From the NCBI GenBank assembly GCA_965637545.1, contig OZ281494.1, forward strand, positions 14,880,001 to 14,944,000: a stretch of DNA of 64,000 bases, read 5' to 3'. The position numbers and the translations under genes were made by a program. A model generated the notes under the pieces. That model searched no databases. It worked only from the letters and a program-made list of their open reading frames with translations, and had not been told where the DNA came from. Positions 3,001 to 36,900 of this stretch are shown here, one piece after another. Source of the DNA: Phallusia mammillata. Its lineage: Eukaryota. Position 1 is the first letter of the stretch, and every line of letters begins with the position of its first letter.

Positions 3001-5196
3001 TGTGAAAATTGCAACAAGATCACTTGCCACTCGAAATCAAACGACACACACTCGCTAGCTACACCCTTGTTGTTTTCTCTGCTTGCTACAAGGCAATGCA
3101 GCTGTCAGTCATTTGCCAACATGCAGTGCCCAAATTTTCCCCAGGCAGCGAAAAATCTCCCAGGCTATGCATAGAAACCAACCAATTCCCGGAATGGACA
3201 AGTTGGAAAAGTCCATTTTTCGTTTTTTACGAGCAATAATGGTTCTGACGTTCATAAAATTGGACATATCGAGTCGACCCTACCGGTTGTAAATATGTCA
3301 AACATTTCCTAAACAATTAGGTCAAGTTTGTTCAATCAAGTTCGTTTGTAAAGTTGCCAATATGTTTTGTGGTAATAATAAATTCAGATACTTCCAGCGG
3401 ACGTACAGGCGCCATCTTACAGCTGTATCCAGCCATCTCACCATGTTTGGGCATGCTTTGTTACTAGAGGGGTAATTGTTAGTTTCGTTTTCAGAACTCT
3501 TGATTGAAACAGTAGCACGACCTCATCATGAATACAAGGTAACCCTTGTATGGTTAGGTAGAATCAAATCGTTGCGTAATCACCTTTACCGGTTTACATT
3601 TGTCAGGCACCCCACGTTAGTTTTTGGTCCCGTGTAGCGCCTTGCCACGAACACGTCAATTCGCCCAGAGCATTCATTAGGTTAATTGGACCGCAATCCC
3701 GCAAAACCGCGCGGTAATCGTGTGATGACGTAGACAGGACATCCTAAATACACAGCGCCTTGCCGACTTAGCAGCGTAGCGTGATGGCGAGCAACCTCTT
3801 TTAACTGTTCTTCTTTATGTAATGTTTCCTGAGCATCAATAAGTGGAAATACAGAACCCGCGCGGCAACTGTATCCCAACAAATAGATAATCGACCGCAA
3901 AATGTCGGTTATCGCATTGTGTATTCAGTTTACCGCCACTCATAACATCCACCTATTTGCACTCAGACTTGAATCAAGGCCTCGAATTGACGGTTCCTTG
4001 TTCGAATGAAGAACCGCCTTCAACCATGAAGCGAGCTGCCAACCGTGGGATCACCCGCAAATTGGATGTGACATTTGCAGGTAAGACAAGAACGCCCAGC
4101 TACCGGCCATTACTCGCCTTTCTGTGGGCTAACTCTCCGTGTGACACACGTTCCACTTAACCCAGAAACGATGTTTACTGATGTCTTGCCGTGTGATAAC
4201 AGTCCACAGCTTGTGTTACGCGCTAAACGACCACCCATGGGCGGCAAATGACTCAGAAAAGAAAGTAATTCAAATCTCAGTTCTCTGCCCTGGCTGGCTG
4301 GTCTCAGACCTTTCTGTGTACGTGCGACCTACAGCGTAGATTAACTGACATTCAGAAAACTGCATTGGGAGGCCCTTCAGTGGGGGGTTGAAATTAGGTC
4401 AAATAACATCAAACAAGGACATTTCATATTTCTTATTTCCGCCTAAAAATGCCAACGAGCCACAAATATATTTACAAAGGTTGAAAAACTGACGTTTCCA
4501 GTGACGTGGATCAATTGTGATAAAATGTCAGGTCCTTTGTGGGAGCTTTGAATTATAGAAAGCATGTTTGAAATGCTTTTAACCATGTATGTTAGTTAAA
4601 TTACTGGTCCAAGTATGTTTTACGGTTTTAAAGTAGTTCACGTAACATTTGAATTGGCACCTTCTCATTGGATGTAAATAAATGTTATTTCTCACTTAGG
4701 CTCAACAAAAATTTCCAAATCCCGCGGGGACAGTGATGCTGGCGCCACGGCGGACCGAGAAATGGGAAAGGAGTTTAATCCCCACCTGGTTATTATGGTC
4801 CGACATCCCACACTAGAGGCATCACAGAGTTCAAACAGGAGACGAAAGAGAGCGTTGGACGCAGATTTCTGCTTCCGTCGCAAGGCCTCCGACACCAATT
4901 GCTGTCTCCGTGAATTGTACATCGATTTTCGCAAGGACCTCGGATGGAACTGGGTCCACGCTCCGACTGGCTACAAAGCAAACTTCTGTGGTGGTGCATG
5001 CCCGTTTATGTGGAGCAGCGACACGCAATACGCCACAATACTGACTCTCTACAAGTCGATGAACCCCCAGGCCTCATCGGCGCCTTGCTGTACAGCGAAA
5101 GATCTAGATCCCCTGACGATCATGTACTACAAGAACGGCTCGTACAAGTTTATTAACATGTCCGATATGGTCTTACTCTCTTGCAAATGCAGCTGA
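1..5196 (+). CDS. TGFB: TGF-beta (sensu stricto) precursor, 5'-truncated by the window edge
   Basis: Phase-consistent GT-AG exons <1-59, 396-543, 3967-4080, 4700-5196. Prodomain motifs TASLRVYQ..EQ/VELYH, WITFDVTSSVRQW, NQGLELTVPC, RGD, NPHLVIM and furin site RRRKR. The mature domain ALDADFCF..NCCLRELYIDFRKDLGWNWVH..CGGACP..PCC..SCKCS* has all nine TGF-beta cysteines. Confidence 0.97.
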
Positions 5197-27100: not shown

Positions 27101-29113
27101 AACCAAATATTTATTGTGAGAGAAACTACTGTTTTTTGTGTGTAAAACTGATGACATTTGTAAATAATTTTTGCATTTGCACGCTTTTTTATACGTTTAC
27201 TATGCTTTTTACAATATTTTTGTCCATTTCAAAACACAATCAGTATTACATTACAGAAAAAGAAGTACGTTACAGACAAAGATGTTGGTTTAGTAAGAAA
27301 CAAGCTAATTGACAAAGTCGTTGGTCCTGTTAAACTTTAGGATAATTAGATGTGCACACATATGACATTCAACAAATACGCAAGCAGGCGACTTGAGACA
27401 TACTAACTTGGTCTTAAGTTCTGTCATAACGTCGCAATTTTGGGGAAGAAAATGTCTTTTAAAATTTTGTTGTTGCAGGGCTGGGTTATCACCACTGATC
27501 GCTACAATCATCGTGTACAGATATTTGACAGCATGGGAAGATTTATTCGAATGTTTGGACAAGAAGGAACTGGTAAGAAAAATTGTAAAAACTTAAAAAT
27601 TGGCCCTTTGTGTAATTTCCTGTGTCATAACCCGTGTAAAACAAAAAGGAACAATTATAATCCGGTCATATTATCCTAAAGTTTGTACGCTGCTAAACAT
27701 GTTTGGACTAATCATGTAAAATATGGCATTTTAACCGAAAGCGTCTGAACTACATGAAAGATTGCCGAATCGAGCGCACGAAATTTTTCGAGCTATTTTC
27801 ACCAAAAAGCCTTGTGCAGGTGAAGGCGAACTCAGCTATCCGTGGGGTGTCGCTACAGACAATATGGGATTTGTATACGTGTGTGACAAAGACAACCACA
27901 GAATACAGGTAGTTTAATCTCTTTGGTGTGTCAAATCAAAACCCCTTTTCCCATATGCCGTGTTTTGTTTAACTTCGTTTCTTTGATTGACGCAGATTTT
28001 TACGTTGGATGGACAGTTCATTCGTAAGTTTGGTCGCATTGGATCCTGCGACTCTCAGTTTGATAGTCCTCACTACATCGCAGTAACAAACGACAACAAA
28101 GTATGACCATCAATGGCAGTTTTGTATTTGTTAATAGTTTTGGTGTCTAAGCTTCTGTGTTGCCTTCGAGTTGCTTTGATGTGTGAGTTAGCCCATTTTA
28201 GCATCTTGTACTGGTGTGGATGTATTTGGGTAATATGAAACTCGGGCCCCAAGTTGTAACCTGCTCAACATACGCGTTTTTAAAATCAACTTTACCCACT
28301 TAGCAACAGGGATCAACAAAGATCATACTTTATCAATTATTTTATCTTTTCCTCTTACCAGGTAATTGTAAGTGATAGTGGCAACCACCGAATCCAGGTT
28401 TTCGACAAATACGGAAGATTTCTACTTAAGTTCGGCAGAGAAGGATCGGCTGATGGATTGCTTAAATATCCACGTGGTGTCGCTGTGGATCGTCATGGAA
28501 ATATTGTTGTCGGGGATAGCGGCAATAACAGGGTGCAGGTGAGATTTGTAATTGCTAGTCAAGACTGAACTCGGACGTCGGTTGTTCCCAGAGACCTAAT
28601 GCCTTGTAGTGTGGGTTTTTGTCGCATTATATTAACTCAGAGTTTCAAAGCTAAATTGAGGTAGCGAATTGACTTCTGTTTAATGCAGGGGTTCTTAACC
28701 TGGGGTGCACGCACCCCCAAGGGGTGCGAGAACTGTTCCTAGGGGGTGCGGGGGTGCTGAATCATTAAGGTTGGTTAGGTCCATTCTATTTAAGCAATTA
28801 CAGAAGGGGGTGCGAAAATTGGTTGGTGATTTGAAAGGGGTGCAGCAAGGAAAAAAGGTTAAGAACCACTGGTTTAATGGGTACCACAATACTAAAGCGG
28901 AAGTTAGAAAACAGTTTGCCTTATTTTTGTTCTTTGATTTCACAAGTACCGTGCTACATTCAGGTTTATACCAGCGACGGTACGTACGTGGCTGGTTTTG
29001 GTTCGTGGGGTCCTGCGCCCGGTCAAATGAAAGGCATCGAGGGAGTCGCGTTGCTAAGCAACAATGACATTGCAGTCAGCGACCGCGAAAATCACCGAAT
29101 ACAGATTTTCTGA
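21172..29113 (+). CDS. nhl-1: RING/B-box-like/coiled-coil/6xNHL E3 ligase of the NHL-1 / Thin(Abba) type (705 aa)
   Basis: 17 phase-consistent exons totalling 2118 nt: 21172-21302, 21430-21565, 21630-21752, 21823-21927, 22008-22093, 22398-22502, 22567-22684, 23241-23385, 23656-23814, 24101-24284, 24745-24856, 26853-26951, 27479-27572, 27820-27908, 27996-28100, 28362-28538, 28964-29113. N-terminus [36 protein letters not shown]. Six NHL repeats ([64 protein letters not shown]). No filamin domain. Confidence 0.92.
22193..22364. mobile_element. Possible decayed hAT-type MITE in TRIM intron 5
   Basis: Ends ..gtgcaaccaggggggtac and ggaaaaaggttaataagttatg resemble the ends of the intact MITE at 28686-28871 and the length is similar. 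TIR pairing is poor and no TSD was seen. Confidence 0.3.
22909..22966. repeat. 20-bp minisatellite, 3 copies, in TRIM intron 7
   Basis: ctggttg(c/t)tac(a/t)ca.. repeats with 20-bp period at 22911, 22931 and 22951. Confidence 0.8.
25840..25864. repeat. (TA)12 microsatellite
   Basis: Uninterrupted TA run in TRIM intron 11. Confidence 0.95.
28686..28871. mobile_element. hAT (Charlie-like) MITE, 186 bp
   Basis: TIRs CAGGGGTTCTTAACCT and AGGTTAAGAACCACTG (15/16 complementary). Perfect 8-bp target-site duplication GTTTAATG at 28678-28685 and 28872-28879. No ORF. Lies in the last TRIM intron. Confidence 0.93.
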
Positions 29114-29591: not shown

Positions 29592-31710
<2,119 letters not shown>

Positions 31711-31901
31711 TTTAATTCCAGAATTTCTTTAAATAATGACTTTTTTTTACCTTAAATTGATTTGATGGAAACACGCAATTTTCGCAAACAAAACATTTAT
31801 GTCGTCATAATGTGCAGTTGAAAATGACAAAGGGAAATATAAAATATAAAACGGAGAGAATTTGTTTTTATTAAAGTTTTATCTTGTATGGAAAGCAAAA
31901 A

Positions 31902-32600
31902 ATGCCTAAATCAAGGTGAAGAATGAACTAATTCACCGTGAAAAAGTGAACAGGTTTTTAATTGGTCGTGTTTTTTTAAAACAGTGAAAATGAGGATTTT
32001 CACTTGCTGGAGCGCAAAATTGGAATGACAGACCTTCGCCAGGACAAAGAAACAAACCAAGGATTCTCCACTGAAGGTGCCAATGGGACAAATAATCGAG
32101 TAACGTCAGACAATATGTCAGAACAGGTGATATTTTCAAATTAAAAAACATATTGTTGGGTCTTTTTTGACATGTTGGTCTGCCTTTATAGTTGTGATAG
32201 GTTAAATAAATGCTACATTAGTTTATCGTATAGCGTGTAAGAACACACCACTTCTGTGGTTTAAGTCGCTGGAATTTAAAATAAATTACGGGTTTAGATT
32301 TCAGTTGCGCGGTCTTTGAGGCGAAAAAGAAAACGTAACAGCGACCTCCGCACTGATTTCACGGAATCGCAACGTAAGACTACTGTACAATCAAAAGCTA
32401 GTGGTGAGGCGAATCAACTCAAAACAACAAAACCGGTTTGGCAAACAAAATCCGTCAAGTCATAGTATTATGTAAATTGGTTTAATATATTGTTTCAGTT
32501 TTTACGAAGCAGTACTATTCTTAAAGAAGGACCTACGTCGGAAAAAAGGAAGCAAATTAATTTTAAAACCTTTTCGTTGCCTCTAGGTGGCGACTCTTGA
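31902..32600 (+). CDS. Candidate orphan 4-exon gene, 131-aa hydrophilic basic protein with an NLS-like RRKRKR
   Basis: Exons 31902-31915, 31985-32126, 32298-32435, 32499-32600 join in phase through GT-AG introns of 69, 171 and 63 nt. Stop TGA is followed immediately by AATAAA (32603-32608). No family similarity recognised. The acceptor at 32297 competes with one at 32304 that would give an early stop. Confidence 0.45.
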
Positions 32601-33159
32601 TCAATAAAATTTACCGCGAACGGTTGTCTGTTTTCTGTTGACAAGCACGTGTGCGTTTGGTATAATCGTTGATGACAGAATCAGATAAACAAAGGTTTAT
32701 GTTAGATTTGTAGGTAAGAGTTGTTGGGATTGTCTTGAAGCACAGTTTAGTTACTATAATTTGCTTAAGCTTATTATTATCATGACATAAGTCGGTTAAC
32801 TAAATAGTTAACTCACCATGCAAGGGGTTCTTTAACATGTAAAACATATTTTTGTACTTTAGGGACTAGTTTTGTCAAAAAATATTTAGTTTAATGAATG
32901 CATTGTTGACAAACAACTAAACGAACTTGCTTTAATAACGAGTTTGTAGCTGTGGACTTGTGATTACATATACAACTGCATTTAGAACACATAAACAATT
33001 CTGCAAACCTAGACAATCATGAATGAACTAAGGTAAACTTTGAGCAATGACCATTGTTCGGTAACAAGCCATAAACGTGGCCTGAATATCGTAGTTTACA
33101 GTGCGGTTAATGTGAGTCAACTTTTGCTGGCAGCTTTGTTTCATTTTAAGAAGTCTGAA

Positions 33160-33300
33160 CAGCACTTGATCGCTGAAACCGCGGCACGTGGTGGCGTCCC
33201 GTCGCCGCGGCGTCGATGATAGCCGCTGAAAAAGGAAAAACTATGCATTGAGTTGGCTAACAGATATGCCGACGTTTTTCGCCGGACAGAAACAGTTAAT
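33160..33300 (+). promoter_or_regulatory. CpG-dense patch, probable Jagged promoter region
   Basis: gcggcacgtggtggcgtcccgtcgccgcggcgtcg (includes a CACGTG E-box) about 750 bp upstream of the Jagged ATG. Candidate 5'-UTR splice sites at 33612 and 33650. Confidence 0.35.
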
Positions 33301-33962
33301 TTCTTCAGTGATTGTGCCGCGATGGTCTGTTAGCGTTAGTATGTTATCAGGGAGCTGCGGTCAAGTGATTAAGAATGTATTTTTGTTTTAATGTAATTAA
33401 ATGACAAAGCCAAGTTGAGTCGACAGATTGTATCATTTTCAGGATTGTTGTAAGTAGTAAACATATTAATTAATCATGTTGAAGTTGGTAGTACGTTTAA
33501 CAATTTTCGCGTTTGTGGTGTGTTATATATTTCGCAGCTCTTATGTTAAACTTAACTTTGAGAACCAGCAAAAGTAACAGCGATATTTAAAGTTTAATTT
33601 ATCCTCTTCTAGGGTTTATTGAATTTTCAAGTATCCACGCAAGACACCAGTAAGTGTTTTGTAGTGTTACCTTTTTTCTATTTGCTTTTAATGTCAGACG
33701 AAATAGCAGCGTTACTGTAGTACCAGTTTGTAGATTGCTGATGAAACGGTACCAATAAGACATAGTGTTTCTAGCCTGTGTAATAAGCCTTCGTGTGAAT
33801 CGTTAAGAAAATCTTCTGCTCCCGAAGAAAACACTGATAATGCAGAGCAGCACAGCGTGGGCAAAGTGACAAGGGCTGAATTTTCTTGAGATTAACCTAA
33901 CTTTTGTGGATTTATCTGTTGCAACGACTACAGAGGAAGCCAGTTGTTGCCAACGAAATACA

Positions 33963-36900
33963 ATGGATAAAAGGCTTCTGCGACGATTTTTAGGTCTGGT
34001 ACTGTGGATTTGTTTGGCCGAGGTAAGGCGCCTGTTTCGCGGCGAAACCTAAAATTGAGTTGCGGTCGTTTTTTGACCAATGGCTGACTAACGAACACAC
34101 ATATTCAATATTGTAACTATACTATGAATGATACTACACTTTTATACACGTAACTCTATATTAATTTTTGCTTGAAAATGTTTCTGTACCGTAATGAGAC
34201 GATACATACGCTTAATTCTTAAAAAAAACATTGGCTTTATGCAAGCGCATTCGAATCGAAGTTAGCTTCGTGGTGTAGGACGTTGATATGCGGCACGAAA
34301 CTAATGCAGCTCTTGGGAATTGGCAAAAGTCCCGTGCGGCCTATTGCTTGACTTAGACATGATGATAGATTCGTTTCGCTTGCGGTAATCTGTACCACCT
34401 CTGTGACAGCTCATATACTGGTTGTACTTTTTTGTTTTTGCTGATTAACAATTCGTTCGTGAGGTCTATCATAAAGTAGGTTAAACAGACGGTGTAAAAC
34501 AGTAAAATGTGACAAGCCTAATTGGAATCCACTTAACAATTCCACATGGACATATGAAATTACGTCAGGATATTTCTAAGTTTGGTTGGTTTGATTTCAT
34601 TACCCAGTAGTTTATAATTTAGGCTTTTTTAAATATACACCAGTTACTCAAAGTTAAATACAGCTATAACATTTATGTTGTATTCACCCAATAACATTCG
34701 AACACTCAAAATCACAGTTTTTTACACTCAAAGTTGCGGGGACAGTTTGTCTTCTGTGTGTGTTAACTTTAGACTGTATAGGTAAGTGCATGACGCTGCT
34801 GTTTTACATTGTTTAACAGGTTGGTCGGAGTACCCCGTTGGGATTCTTCGAGTTGCAGATTGTGCGCTTGCAGAACACGGCCGGTGAACTTCTCAGTGGC
34901 GAGTGCTGCGACGGCACGCGTAACGAGAGTGGCTTATGCCTGGCCGACAGGTGCGACACGTTTTTTCGGGTATGCTTGAAAGCGTACCAGACAAGCAGTA
35001 GCGAATCGAATTCAGAAAAATGCATGTTTGGAACTGCGACCAGTCCTCTGTTGGGAAGTAACTCTCTGGTCGTAGAATCCATCGACGACCCTGACAACCC
35101 AGGTCGCTTTAAGATTCCACTGTTGTTTACTTGGATGGTACGTACCACATTTTTAATTCTCGCCGTTTCGAGTCACAGTGTTACTATTTAAGGCAATTTG
35201 GTTCGAGAACTGCCATGTACATTTGTTGGTGTAAATTAATGCTTCGGCGAGTCGCCAAGCGTCTTGACATAATGTTTATACTTTGCCGGGCAAGTAATCC
35301 AAGGTAAACAACAAAATATGCCAAGCCCACCCTGCTAACATATTCCAATCGTCCCATCACTATTAATAAGCCAATAAAACGTTGTCATGCGGCAATGTTT
35401 GCCGAGTGCGCATTCTACATAAGATGGTGCATTTTGAGTAAACAGTTGACGACGGTTCTACGTTGGTGTCAATTTCGCTGTTTAGCAAAGTATTGCGTTT
35501 TGCCTTTTATGTTCAACCTCATACCACCCTTAGTTAACCTATTTTAGGGCAAAATTTTTACTTAAAATAGCTGAACATTTTCGTGCCGAACGCCAATTGA
35601 ATAAATGTCTGTAAGCTGAAGTATGCGCTCGCGAGCGTTTTAATTTCATACAATTTCAAGTCACACCCGACACGAGGATTGGTGATAATTGCCGTCTGGC
35701 CTCTAATAACACCTTTGCAATTGAGGTGCTTCGTTTAAAAATTTGTACCTCTCTAGCCCTTTATACCTCATTCACGGGACAGTCATGTAATTTCATGGTA
35801 TTGAGCTTTGATTTGAGTATTTTGCTATAGTTCCACCAGTTACGAATAGGTCAACAGTTAGCACGTTTATAGTTAACACAAAAATTGCGTTTGGCGATAA
35901 TGTATCGCGGCGGTTATGTATTGTCTGTTGTCCCAAGCGGCCCTTTGATCCCGGCGCAATCGAGCTTGCTGGCACATTGTGTTGCGATAACGGCTCATTA
36001 CTAAAGCACTGTACGCTTACTCACTGGGCCAAGTCGCTGCTGTGATTGAGTCGTGTGGGTCGAATGGGGGCCCTTATCGTGAACAACAGCCCGGCACTTT
36101 CACATCAAACGCCAAGCAGTAAAACGAGATCGATTTCGATGTAGGGCAGCGTCTGCCAAAGTTGCGTTTTTGGGTTTTACGGCAGGCTGCAATCGTTTCG
36201 AATTTTTTATTTGTCGTTTGTGAACACAGCGCGTCCGGTTTTCGCGCCACGCCCGCTCGCATTGGCATTTGTTTACGTTATCTATTACGGCGACGATTGA
36301 CCGACGATCTCTGGTCAAATGCAGACACCGGGTGTCCAGACCTTAATCCACTTGTGCCTTCGCGCCTTCACGCTCGACGTGTCATTGTTTGTTGGGGTTT
36401 ACCTTTCGTTAAGTGACCGGCGATGAGTAAAGATAACGTCACAGCCGCATTAGAACTTTGCTGTTTGGACTGCTGGGTGTCTGAATGTTTTGTTCTCGTT
36501 ACAAATGCACCTGTGAGTGCAAAATCGTGTCGTGTGCGATACAGCGACGAGTGCTTCGCAGCGCGGGTGTTAGTAAATATTGGGTAACACATTTATTGGG
36601 TACGGCCAAGTGTTCGTAAATAGTACTGCGAAGATGACTGCGTGTTTCCCACTTAGACAGCCTTGAAGCAAACATTTTTTTCGCGTCTTGCGCACGCGAA
36701 ATGCCGGTTCTCACACAGGTGTGCACCTACCAGCGCTAATGGCCGCGAATTCAATTTAGTTTACAGCTTACGTAATAAAAACAGCCCTTCGCACATTCAA
36801 AAGTAAACAAACATTTAACATTTGGGAAAGACCTTAAAAGCTGTGCGGCGAATGTGTATTACACGCTGTGCCACCGTGACGTCTGAAAGTGCACCGGTCT

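What the first reader, a model, noticed from the sequence alone, without database searches (positions are those of the whole stretch)
31711..32608. Hidden orphan gene head-to-head with TSSK: a possible kinase-partner module
Seen: four small exons invisible to the ORF track splice in phase to MPKSSENEDFHLLERKIGMTDLRQDKETNQGFSTEGANGTNNRVTSDNMSEQISVARSLRRKRKRNSDLRTDFTESQRKTTVQSKASGEANQLKTTKPFLRSSTILKEGPTSEKRKQINFKTFSLPLGGDS* (131 aa). AATAAA follows 2 nt after the stop, and the ATG is only ~190 bp from the divergent TSSK ATG. The protein is hydrophilic and S/T-rich, with an NLS-like RRKRKR and several R/K-x-x-S/T motifs (RKRNS, RKTT, RSST). Known: TSSKs are spermatid kinases of the CAMK group that favour basophilic sites, and bidirectional promoters co-express gene pairs. 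Inference: an unannotated germ-line nuclear protein co-transcribed with, and possibly phosphorylated by, the neighbouring kinase.
Basis: partly seen in the sequence, partly recalled or inferred. Interest (0 to 1): 0.75.

Follow-up and report, generated by a model that had tools for sequence, protein, structure and literature searches.

The report
Probable small orphan gene beside kinase
A short stretch next to a sperm-type kinase gene in the sea squirt Phallusia mammillata looks like a real, small, species-restricted gene with unknown function, but no expression data could be reached and nothing supports the idea that its product is the kinase's partner.

Summary
Exons 31902-31915, 31985-32126, 32298-32435 and 32499-32600 join in phase through GT-AG introns to 131 codons. 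AATAAA lies 2 nt after the stop, and the ATG is 191 bp from the divergent kinase ATG.

The spliced ORF alone is not above chance: 40% of 700-nt tiles in the window allow one of 131 aa or more. The ORF-independent signals are above chance:
- Two donors and two acceptors are strong.
- Introns are T-rich and exons are T-poor.
- A G+T-rich element follows the AATAAA.
- A composite score ranks the model 2nd of 1615 control tile-strands, and most of the other top tiles lie in real genes.

Only exon 2 has a clear coding signal. Acceptor 32298 and donor 32436 are weak, so products of 131, 85 (exon 3 skipped) or 56 aa (acceptor 32305) cannot be told apart.

No relative was found in any search: Pfam, word search, 1.84 billion representatives (exon 2 only), the Atlas, metagenome contigs, or the window's own genome. 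Basophilic phospho-motifs are not enriched (5 seen, 5.7 expected).

Verdict: probably a real taxon-restricted gene or transcript (about 0.55 coding, 0.2 non-coding). The kinase-partner idea is untested speculation. The joined protein was never searched as a whole.

The parts
29592..31710 (-). Neighbouring kinase-only CAMK-type (TSSK-like) gene, about 6 exons. ATG at 31708-31710, stop at 29592-29594.
   Evidence: Pfam Pkinase matches exon pieces, and the profile ends 6 residues before the stop. Top solved relatives are SIK3, MARK, TSSK6 and MAPKAPK2/3. It is about 30% identical to intronless TSSK-like ORFs of the same genome. A crude gene model gives about 307 aa.
31711..31901 (.). 191-bp inter-ATG region with 25% GC: candidate shared (bidirectional) promoter. 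TATA-like motifs on the + strand at 31838 and 31845. An out-of-frame upstream ATG at 31888.
   Evidence: Composition; motifs and the upstream ATG.
31902..31915 (+). Coding part of exon 1 (MPKS plus 2 nt). Donor aag|GTGAAG.
   Evidence: The donor matches 7 of 9 consensus positions, in the top 3.6% of all GT in the window.
31916..31984 (+). Intron 1, 69 nt, with a T-rich acceptor tract.
   Evidence: acceptor T count in the top 6%.
31985..32126 (+). Exon 2 (47 full codons): the only exon with a clear coding signal. Donor cag|GTGATA.
   Evidence: Coding score is +0.34 bits/codon, the best of six frames. Its open stretch scores 15 bits, in the top 2% of 1174 similar stretches. The donor matches 7 of 9 positions.
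32127..32297 (+). Intron 2, 171 nt. The acceptor at 32297 is weak. A better acceptor ends at 32304 and gives a stop after 4 codons.
32298..32435 (+). Exon 3 (46 codons, holds RRKRKR). It may be a cassette: it is 138 nt, and skipping it keeps the frame. Donor ccg|GTTTGG is weak.
   Evidence: The coding score is ordinary: 3.3 bits, with 34% of controls higher. The donor matches 5 of 9 positions. Composition is exon-like, GC 0.45 and T 0.19.
32436..32498 (+). Intron 3, 63 nt, in frame with one TAG. The acceptor is strong.
   Evidence: acceptor T count in the top 3%.
32499..32600 (+). Terminal exon (33 codons plus TGA).
   Evidence: The coding score is ordinary.
32603..32608 (+). AATAAA poly(A) signal, 2 nt after the stop.
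   Evidence: AATAAA occurs at 0.73 per kb on this strand. Only 3.3% of chance-built ORFs have one within 30 nt of their stop.
32619..32658 (+). G+T-rich downstream element, 67.5% G+T.
   Evidence: in the top 5.6% of all 107 AATAAA sites of the window.

Best explanation
This is a small, taxon-restricted RNA polymerase II gene of Phallusia mammillata, lying head-to-head with a kinase-only, TSSK-like CAMK kinase gene.

**Proposed transcript.**
- Transcription starts downstream of a TATA-like motif at 31838-31850. Alternatively, the 5' end is set by trans-splicing at the AG at 31894-31895.
- A 69-nt intron joins a tiny first coding exon to exon 2.
- The transcript ends in the exon that carries the stop at 32598, at an AATAAA followed by a G+T-rich element.

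**Exon 3 and the possible products.**
- Exon 3 included: a 131-aa product with a classical basic import signal (RRKRKR).
- Exon 3 skipped: an 85-aa product in the same frame.
- Exon 3 entered at 32305: a 56-aa product from a transcript likely to be degraded.

**The protein and its regulation.** The product is basic (pI 10), very hydrophilic and probably disordered. The 191-bp AT-rich spacer could serve both genes as a bidirectional promoter.

**Shown versus inferred.** Shown: the sequence anatomy and its statistical standing. Inferred: transcription, which isoform is made, nuclear import and co-regulation.
For: **Anatomy.** The splice arithmetic is exact.

**Splice sites.** Donors 31916 and 32127 are each in the top 3.6% of all GT. 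Acceptors 31985 and 32499 have T-rich tracts, in the top 6% and 3%.

**Composition.**
- The T contrast between introns and exons is 0.153, against 0.006 +/- 0.051 for chance-built spliced ORFs (top 0.2%).
- Exon GC is 0.43-0.45 against 0.29-0.32 in the introns.

**Coding score.** +0.171 bits/codon. Real coding chunks give 0.236 +/- 0.11, and chance ORFs give 0.014 +/- 0.118.

**Composite rank.**
- The model ranks 2nd of 1615 tile-strands over about 200 kb.
- At least 7 of the other top 15 overlap long coding ORFs on the sense strand.
- The only window tile that beat it on coding score, GC contrast and T contrast together holds a TGF-beta ligand exon.

**3' end.** AATAAA lies 2 nt after the stop, with a G+T-rich element in the top 5.6%.

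**Other points.**
- Intron sizes of 63-171 nt resemble the neighbour's 75-81-nt introns.
- The region is single-copy, is not a repeat, and matches no known RNA family or tRNA.
Against: - No transcript, protein or homologue was found anywhere.
- The collection does hold Phallusia mammillata transcript-derived proteins: 3 of 8 control ORFs matched exactly. This one is absent, although two TSSK-like control ORFs are absent too.
- The ORF length is not above chance.
- Only exon 2 has a coding signal. Exons 3 and 4 are ordinary.
- Acceptor 32298 and donor 32436 are no better than random AG and GT.
- The three isoform models score alike, at 18.4, 19.7 and 18.5 bits.
- An out-of-frame ATG at 31888 precedes the start if the TATA-like motif is used.
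- Two more AATAAA lie inside intron 2.
- The features in the composite score were chosen after seeing the candidate.
Confidence: 0.55

Rival explanations
1. A real, spliced and polyadenylated divergent transcript from the kinase promoter that is non-coding, or yields only a short peptide (an upstream antisense or long non-coding RNA). On this reading the 131-codon frame is incidental.
For: - The ORF-independent signals (splice sites, composition contrast, poly(A) site) carry most of the support.
- Exons 3 and 4 have no coding signal beyond chance.
- The stronger acceptor at 32305 ends the frame after 56 codons.
- An upstream out-of-frame ATG is present at 31888.
- No homologue was found.
Against: - Exon 2 scores as coding in the predicted frame: the best of six frames, and in the top 2% of comparable open stretches.
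- All three larger exons are open in one continuous phase, with a 5-8% chance each given their composition.
- The stop sits right at the poly(A) signal.
Confidence: 0.2
2. Chance ORF in promoter or intergenic DNA between the kinase and Jagged. No stable transcript is made. A-rich, T-poor patches simply lack stop codons.
For: - Spliced ORFs of 131 aa or more can be built in 40% of tiles and in 9.5% of shuffles.
- All stop codons start with T, and the exons are only 19% T.
- Two of the six splice sites are ordinary.
- No relatives and no paralogues were found.
Against: - The composite rank is 2nd of 1615, with real genes filling most of the other top ranks.
- An AATAAA within 30 nt of the stop occurs in only 3.3% of controls, and this one also has a top-5.6% downstream element.
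- Four splice sites are each in the top 3-6%.
Confidence: 0.25
3. The reader's module: the product is a germ-line nuclear protein that is co-expressed with the neighbouring TSSK-like kinase and phosphorylated by it, or otherwise partners with it.
For: - The two genes are head-to-head with 191 bp between ATGs.
- The neighbour has the kinase-only build and, from my own knowledge of the family, the GEGTYSKVK and HRDIKCEN motifs typical of TSSKs.
- The product is basic and S/T-rich.
Against: - [RK]xx[ST] occurs 5 times against 5.7 expected, and R..[ST] 3 times against 2.7, so there is no enrichment.
- No Pfam family matches, which covers any TSSK-partner family that Pfam holds.
- There is no paralogue of the peptide anywhere in a genome with more than 100 kinase ORFs, many of them TSSK-like.
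- Adjacency alone is weak evidence for binding.
- Expression could not be tested.
Confidence: 0.05

Closest known systems
Orphan (taxonomically restricted) small protein genes
   Same: The product is short, disordered and hydrophilic. No detectable homologue was found in any library searched, and codon usage is close to background. Such genes make up 10-30% of the genes in many genomes (PMC3590893, abstract).
   Different: Expression is not shown here. Restriction to the species or genus is not shown either, because no close ascidian genome could be searched.
Head-to-head gene pairs with a bidirectional promoter
   Same: The orientation is divergent, the two ATGs are 191 bp apart, and the spacer is AT-rich.
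   Different: Transcription start sites and co-expression are unknown. Only the + strand has a TATA-like motif.
Mammalian TSSK partners TSKS (substrate) and TSACC/SIP (small co-chaperone of about 125 aa); named from my own knowledge
   Same: TSACC is similar in size, and the candidate lies beside a TSSK-like kinase.
   Different: No sequence similarity was detected (no Pfam hit at E <= 1; no hit for exon 2 among 1.84 billion representatives). The mammalian partners are not encoded next to their kinases. No binding or phosphorylation evidence exists here.
Promoter upstream / divergent antisense transcripts
   Same: The unit starts within 200 bp of a gene's start on the other strand, is short (about 0.7 kb), and ends at an early AATAAA.
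   Different: Such transcripts are usually unspliced and poor in donor sites. Here two donors and two acceptors are strong, and exon 2 looks coding.

Membership tests
Spliced, polyadenylated protein-coding gene | Canonical GT-AG introns that keep one open frame from ATG to stop | tested here: met
   By itself this is not above chance.
Spliced, polyadenylated protein-coding gene | Splice sites stronger than random GT/AG | tested here: inconclusive
   Four of six sites are in the top 3-6%. Acceptor 32298 and donor 32436 are ordinary. The mean donor score is in the top 0.9% of chance-built models.
Spliced, polyadenylated protein-coding gene | Coding-type codon and phase statistics | tested here: inconclusive
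   The whole model scores +0.171 bits/codon, at my estimate about the lower third of real coding and the top 9% of chance ORFs. The signal comes almost entirely from exon 2.
Spliced, polyadenylated protein-coding gene | Poly(A) signal with a downstream G/U-rich element after the stop | tested here: met
   AATAAA at 32603. The stretch 32619-32658 is 67.5% G+T, in the top 5.6%.
Spliced, polyadenylated protein-coding gene | Transcript or peptide evidence | not testable with these tools
   No RNA-seq is at hand. No protein containing exon 2 is in the protein collections, although Phallusia mammillata proteins are held there.
Spliced, polyadenylated protein-coding gene | Conservation of the frame in related species | not testable with these tools
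   No ascidian genomes are available to search. There were no hits in the protein representatives, the Atlas or metagenome contigs, and no paralogue in the window's own genome.
TSSK substrate or partner | Enrichment of basophilic R/K-x-x-S/T sites over composition | tested here: not met
   5 observed against 5.66 +/- 1.88 in shuffles; P(>=obs) = 0.73.
TSSK substrate or partner | Similarity to known partners (TSKS, TSACC) | tested here: not met
   No Pfam family matches any exon at E <= 1. Exons 3 and 4 were not put to the large HMMER search.
TSSK substrate or partner | Physical binding, phosphorylation or co-expression | not tested
   No complex prediction was sent, because the report does not claim binding and the joined chain has no reference.
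Sperm nuclear basic proteins (protamine-like, transition proteins) | Very high arginine/lysine content | tested here: not met
   K+R is 25 of 131 (19%), with 17 acidic residues. Such proteins are far richer in R/K (own knowledge).
Bidirectional head-to-head gene pair | Divergent starts less than 1 kb apart | tested here: met
   191 bp lie between the ATGs. This holds only if the candidate gene is real.
TSSK family (the neighbour) | Kinase-only architecture within the CAMK group | tested here: met
   The Pkinase profile ends 6 residues before the stop. Top solved relatives are SIK3, MARK, TSSK6 and MAPKAPK.
TSSK family (the neighbour) | Orthology to TSSKs rather than MARK, SIK or other CAMKL kinases; testis expression | tested here: inconclusive
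   Exon-level searches do not separate TSSK6 from MARK or SIK. The GEGTYSKVK and KCEN motifs point to TSSK only from my own knowledge. Expression is not testable.

The most novel reading that the evidence does not exclude
A species- or genus-restricted basic nuclear protein that arose beside a TSSK-like kinase gene, shares its bidirectional promoter, and is expressed in spermatids as that kinase's dedicated substrate or regulator. That would be a newly born kinase-partner gene pair.
Probability: 0.05. Interest if true: 0.5.

Novelty: new member of a known kind. Interest (0 to 1): 0.22.

Why it matters
If real, this is one more small, fast-evolving gene that ORF-based tracks miss in a compact tunicate genome. 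It would also be a case for studying how a new gene settles on the far side of an existing promoter. That is useful for annotating the Phallusia mammillata assembly but is not surprising, because orphan genes and head-to-head pairs are common. The kinase-partner idea would be more interesting, but it has no support beyond adjacency.

Tried and rejected
**Searches that found nothing**
- Pfam on the three larger exons.
- Word search with exon 2: no candidate. It only sees proteins of 26-82 aa, so it would have caught the 56-aa isoform but not the 131-aa one.
- Full HMMER search of 1.84 billion representatives with exon 2: 0 hits. The cap was one job, so exons 3 and 4 were not searched this way.
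- ESM Atlas with exons 3 and 4: no usable hit.
- Metagenome contigs with the 54-codon open stretch around exon 2: none. The first try with the 47-aa piece was under the size limit.
- Own-genome search by DNA and six-frame protein: self only, so no paralogue or haplotig.
- Exact look-up of the kinase's first ORF on public contigs: not on record.
- Rfam, tRNA and repeat scans of 31500-34900: nothing of note.
- Two literature searches gave only general background.

**Steps that failed**
- One script had a syntax error.
- One PDB query had a frame slip, corrected.

- The joined 131-aa (or 85-aa) protein was not sent to any search, fold or complex tool, because it has no reference. It was joined only inside scripts for translation and statistics.

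**Readings rejected**
- The exons are 3' exons of the upstream NHL-repeat gene: that gene ends with its last NHL repeat at 29110.
- The exons are 5' exons of Jagged: the poly(A) site follows the stop, and 2.2 kb lie before the MNNL exon at 34838.
- A snoRNA host gene: no Rfam match.

Full report
**Where this is.** The window is G000:C1:14880001-14944000 of a 240-Mb assembly. I confirmed it. Three of eight intronless kinase ORFs taken from other parts of the same assembly are exact matches to Phallusia mammillata entries: A0A6F9DL44 (p38), A0A6F9D6R6 (aurora) and A0A6F9DUS1 (SYK-like). The window has no N runs, and nothing in it was taken for human.

**Local gene map.**
- An NHL-repeat gene ends on the + strand at 29110.
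- A kinase gene runs on the - strand from 31710 to 29592.
- The Jagged MNNL exon starts on the + strand at 34838.
- The finding lies in the 3.1 kb between the kinase ATG and Jagged.

- The introns are 69, 171 and 63 nt, all GT-AG.
- AATAAA starts 2 nt after the stop.
- 191 bp separate the two ATGs.
- The alternative acceptor ending at 32304 gives four codons and then a stop.
- The product would have pI 10.05 and GRAVY -1.2, with 30 S+T, 25 K+R and no C, W or Y.

**Is it more than chance? The ORF alone is not.**
- I ran a dynamic-programming search for the longest ATG-to-stop frame with at most three GT-AG introns of 45-300 nt. It finds 131 aa or more in 40% of 700-nt tile-strands of the window, and in 9.5% of mononucleotide shuffles of the region.
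- The exons are only 19% T. All stop codons begin with T, so open frames there come cheaply.

**The ORF-independent signals are above chance.** As controls I used spliced ORFs built by the same search on every 700-nt tile of the window and of fourteen 10-kb stretches of the genome, on both strands. Real genes were not removed. This gave 1614 models of 100 aa or more with at least two introns. Against these controls:

| Feature | Candidate | Controls | Controls at or above candidate |
|---|---|---|---|
| Intron-minus-exon T fraction | 0.153 | 0.006 +/- 0.051 | 0.2% |
| Mean donor match to MAG\|GTRAGT | 6.33 of 9 | 4.36 +/- 0.78 | 0.9% |
| Mean T count in acceptor tracts | 8.0 | 5.5 +/- 1.5 | 5.5% |
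| Phase-specific Markov coding score (bits/codon) | +0.171 | 0.014 +/- 0.118 | 8.8% |

- Real coding chunks of the same length score 0.236 +/- 0.11 bits/codon.
- The sum of the four z-scores ranks the model 2nd of 1615.
- At least 7 of the other top 15 overlap long coding ORFs on the sense strand. Most of the rest lie in or beside known genes on the sense strand, and one is antisense to a kinase ORF.
- In the window-only test, one tile of 508 matched the candidate on coding score, GC contrast and T contrast together. That tile holds a TGF-beta ligand exon.
- Only 3.3% of control models have an AATAAA within 30 nt of their stop.
- The 40 nt after this AATAAA are 67.5% G+T, in the top 5.6% of all 107 AATAAA sites in the window.
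- The intron sizes resemble the neighbour kinase's 75- and 81-nt introns. The kinase's own donors score 6-8 of 9.
I read this as good but not conclusive support for a real transcription unit.

**Weak points in the model.**
- Site by site, donors 31916 (aag|GTGAAG) and 32127 (cag|GTGATA) and acceptors 31985 and 32499 are strong. Acceptor 32298 and donor 32436 (ccg|GTTTGG) are no better than random sites. Both weak sites flank exon 3.
- Exon 3 is 138 nt, so skipping it keeps the frame and gives an 85-aa product that uses only strong sites.
- The better acceptor at 32305 gives a 56-aa product.
- A crude score of coding bits plus splice terms cannot separate the three models: 18.4, 19.7 and 18.5 bits.
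- Nearly all the coding signal sits in exon 2, at 16.7 bits. Its open stretch is in the top 2% of 1174 stretches of similar length. Exons 3 and 4 are ordinary.
- An out-of-frame ATG at 31888 would come first if transcription starts after the TATA-like motif at 31838-31850. Trans-splicing at the AG at 31894-31895 would remove it, but that is conjecture.

**Relatives: none found.**
- Pfam gives nothing for any exon.
- The word search with exon 2 found no candidate.
- The full HMMER pass over 1.84 billion representatives with exon 2 gave no hit at E <= 0.001.
- The Atlas gave no usable hit for exons 3 and 4.
- Metagenome contigs hold no relative.
- The window's own genome holds only the locus itself.
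- The protein collection does contain Phallusia mammillata transcript-derived proteins, so the absence carries some weight. But two TSSK-like control ORFs are also missing from it, so a testis-limited gene could easily be absent.
- The spliced model was searched exon by exon, by reference. The joined protein was not sent to any search, fold or complex tool.
- No ascidian genome or RNA-seq could be reached, so conservation and expression remain open.

**The neighbour.**
- It is a kinase-only protein of about 300 aa. The Pkinase profile ends six residues before the stop.
- Its nearest solved relatives are SIK3, MARK, TSSK6 and MAPKAPK2/3.
- It is about 30% identical to intronless TSSK-like ORFs elsewhere in the genome.
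- The GEGTYSKVK loop and the HRDIKCEN motif are, from my own knowledge, typical of TSSKs.
- 'TSSK-like' is therefore reasonable, but orthology and testis expression were not shown.

**The module idea.**
- Adjacency is all there is.
- The motifs are not enriched.
- No known partner family matches.
- The peptide is not duplicated along with any of the more than 100 kinase ORFs of the genome.
- At 19% K+R the product is not protamine-like.

**Verdict.**
- Most likely (0.55) this is a real small taxon-restricted coding gene, with an uncertain isoform, sharing a 191-bp spacer with the kinase gene.
- Next (0.2) is a spliced non-coding divergent transcript.
- Chance remains at about 0.25.
- The kinase-partner reading is about 0.05.
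- This is ordinary biology if true. The decisive test is junction and poly(A) reads in existing or new RNA-seq.

Noticed in passing
G000:C2, about 0.69-4.2 Mb (also C28, and parts of C3, C4, C6): Dozens of near-identical, intronless or one-intron Pkinase ORFs of about 300-400 aa form a large array: more than 70 of the 125 scored matches. Two intronless relatives elsewhere (L007, L009) carry the TSSK-like N-terminal motif and are absent from the public Phallusia mammillata protein set.
   Followed up: partly
window 4678-5193 (+): A 172-codon open stretch ends in a full TGF_beta ligand domain (PF00019, E = 4.6e-25), preceded by an RRRKR furin-type site: a TGF-beta family ligand gene about 27 kb upstream of the finding.
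   Followed up: partly
L007 5147-6049 (-) and 6670-7491 (+): Two TSSK-like kinase ORFs lie head-to-head about 620 bp apart, so divergent pairing occurs around TSSK-like genes elsewhere in this genome.
   Followed up: no
window 28877-29110 (+) and 29592 (-): The NHL-repeat gene and the kinase gene end tail-to-tail, with only about 480 bp between their stop codons.
   Followed up: no
L003 1694-2533 (+): Open frames of 191-280 codons on both strands, made of P/T/S/D/R-rich repeats (DDVRRTTT-like units), lie about 2 kb from the aurora kinase gene.
   Followed up: no
window 31933-32151 (-): A 72-aa ORF runs antisense to exon 2. Its coding score is low, and it looks like a shadow of the open + strand frame.
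   Followed up: partly
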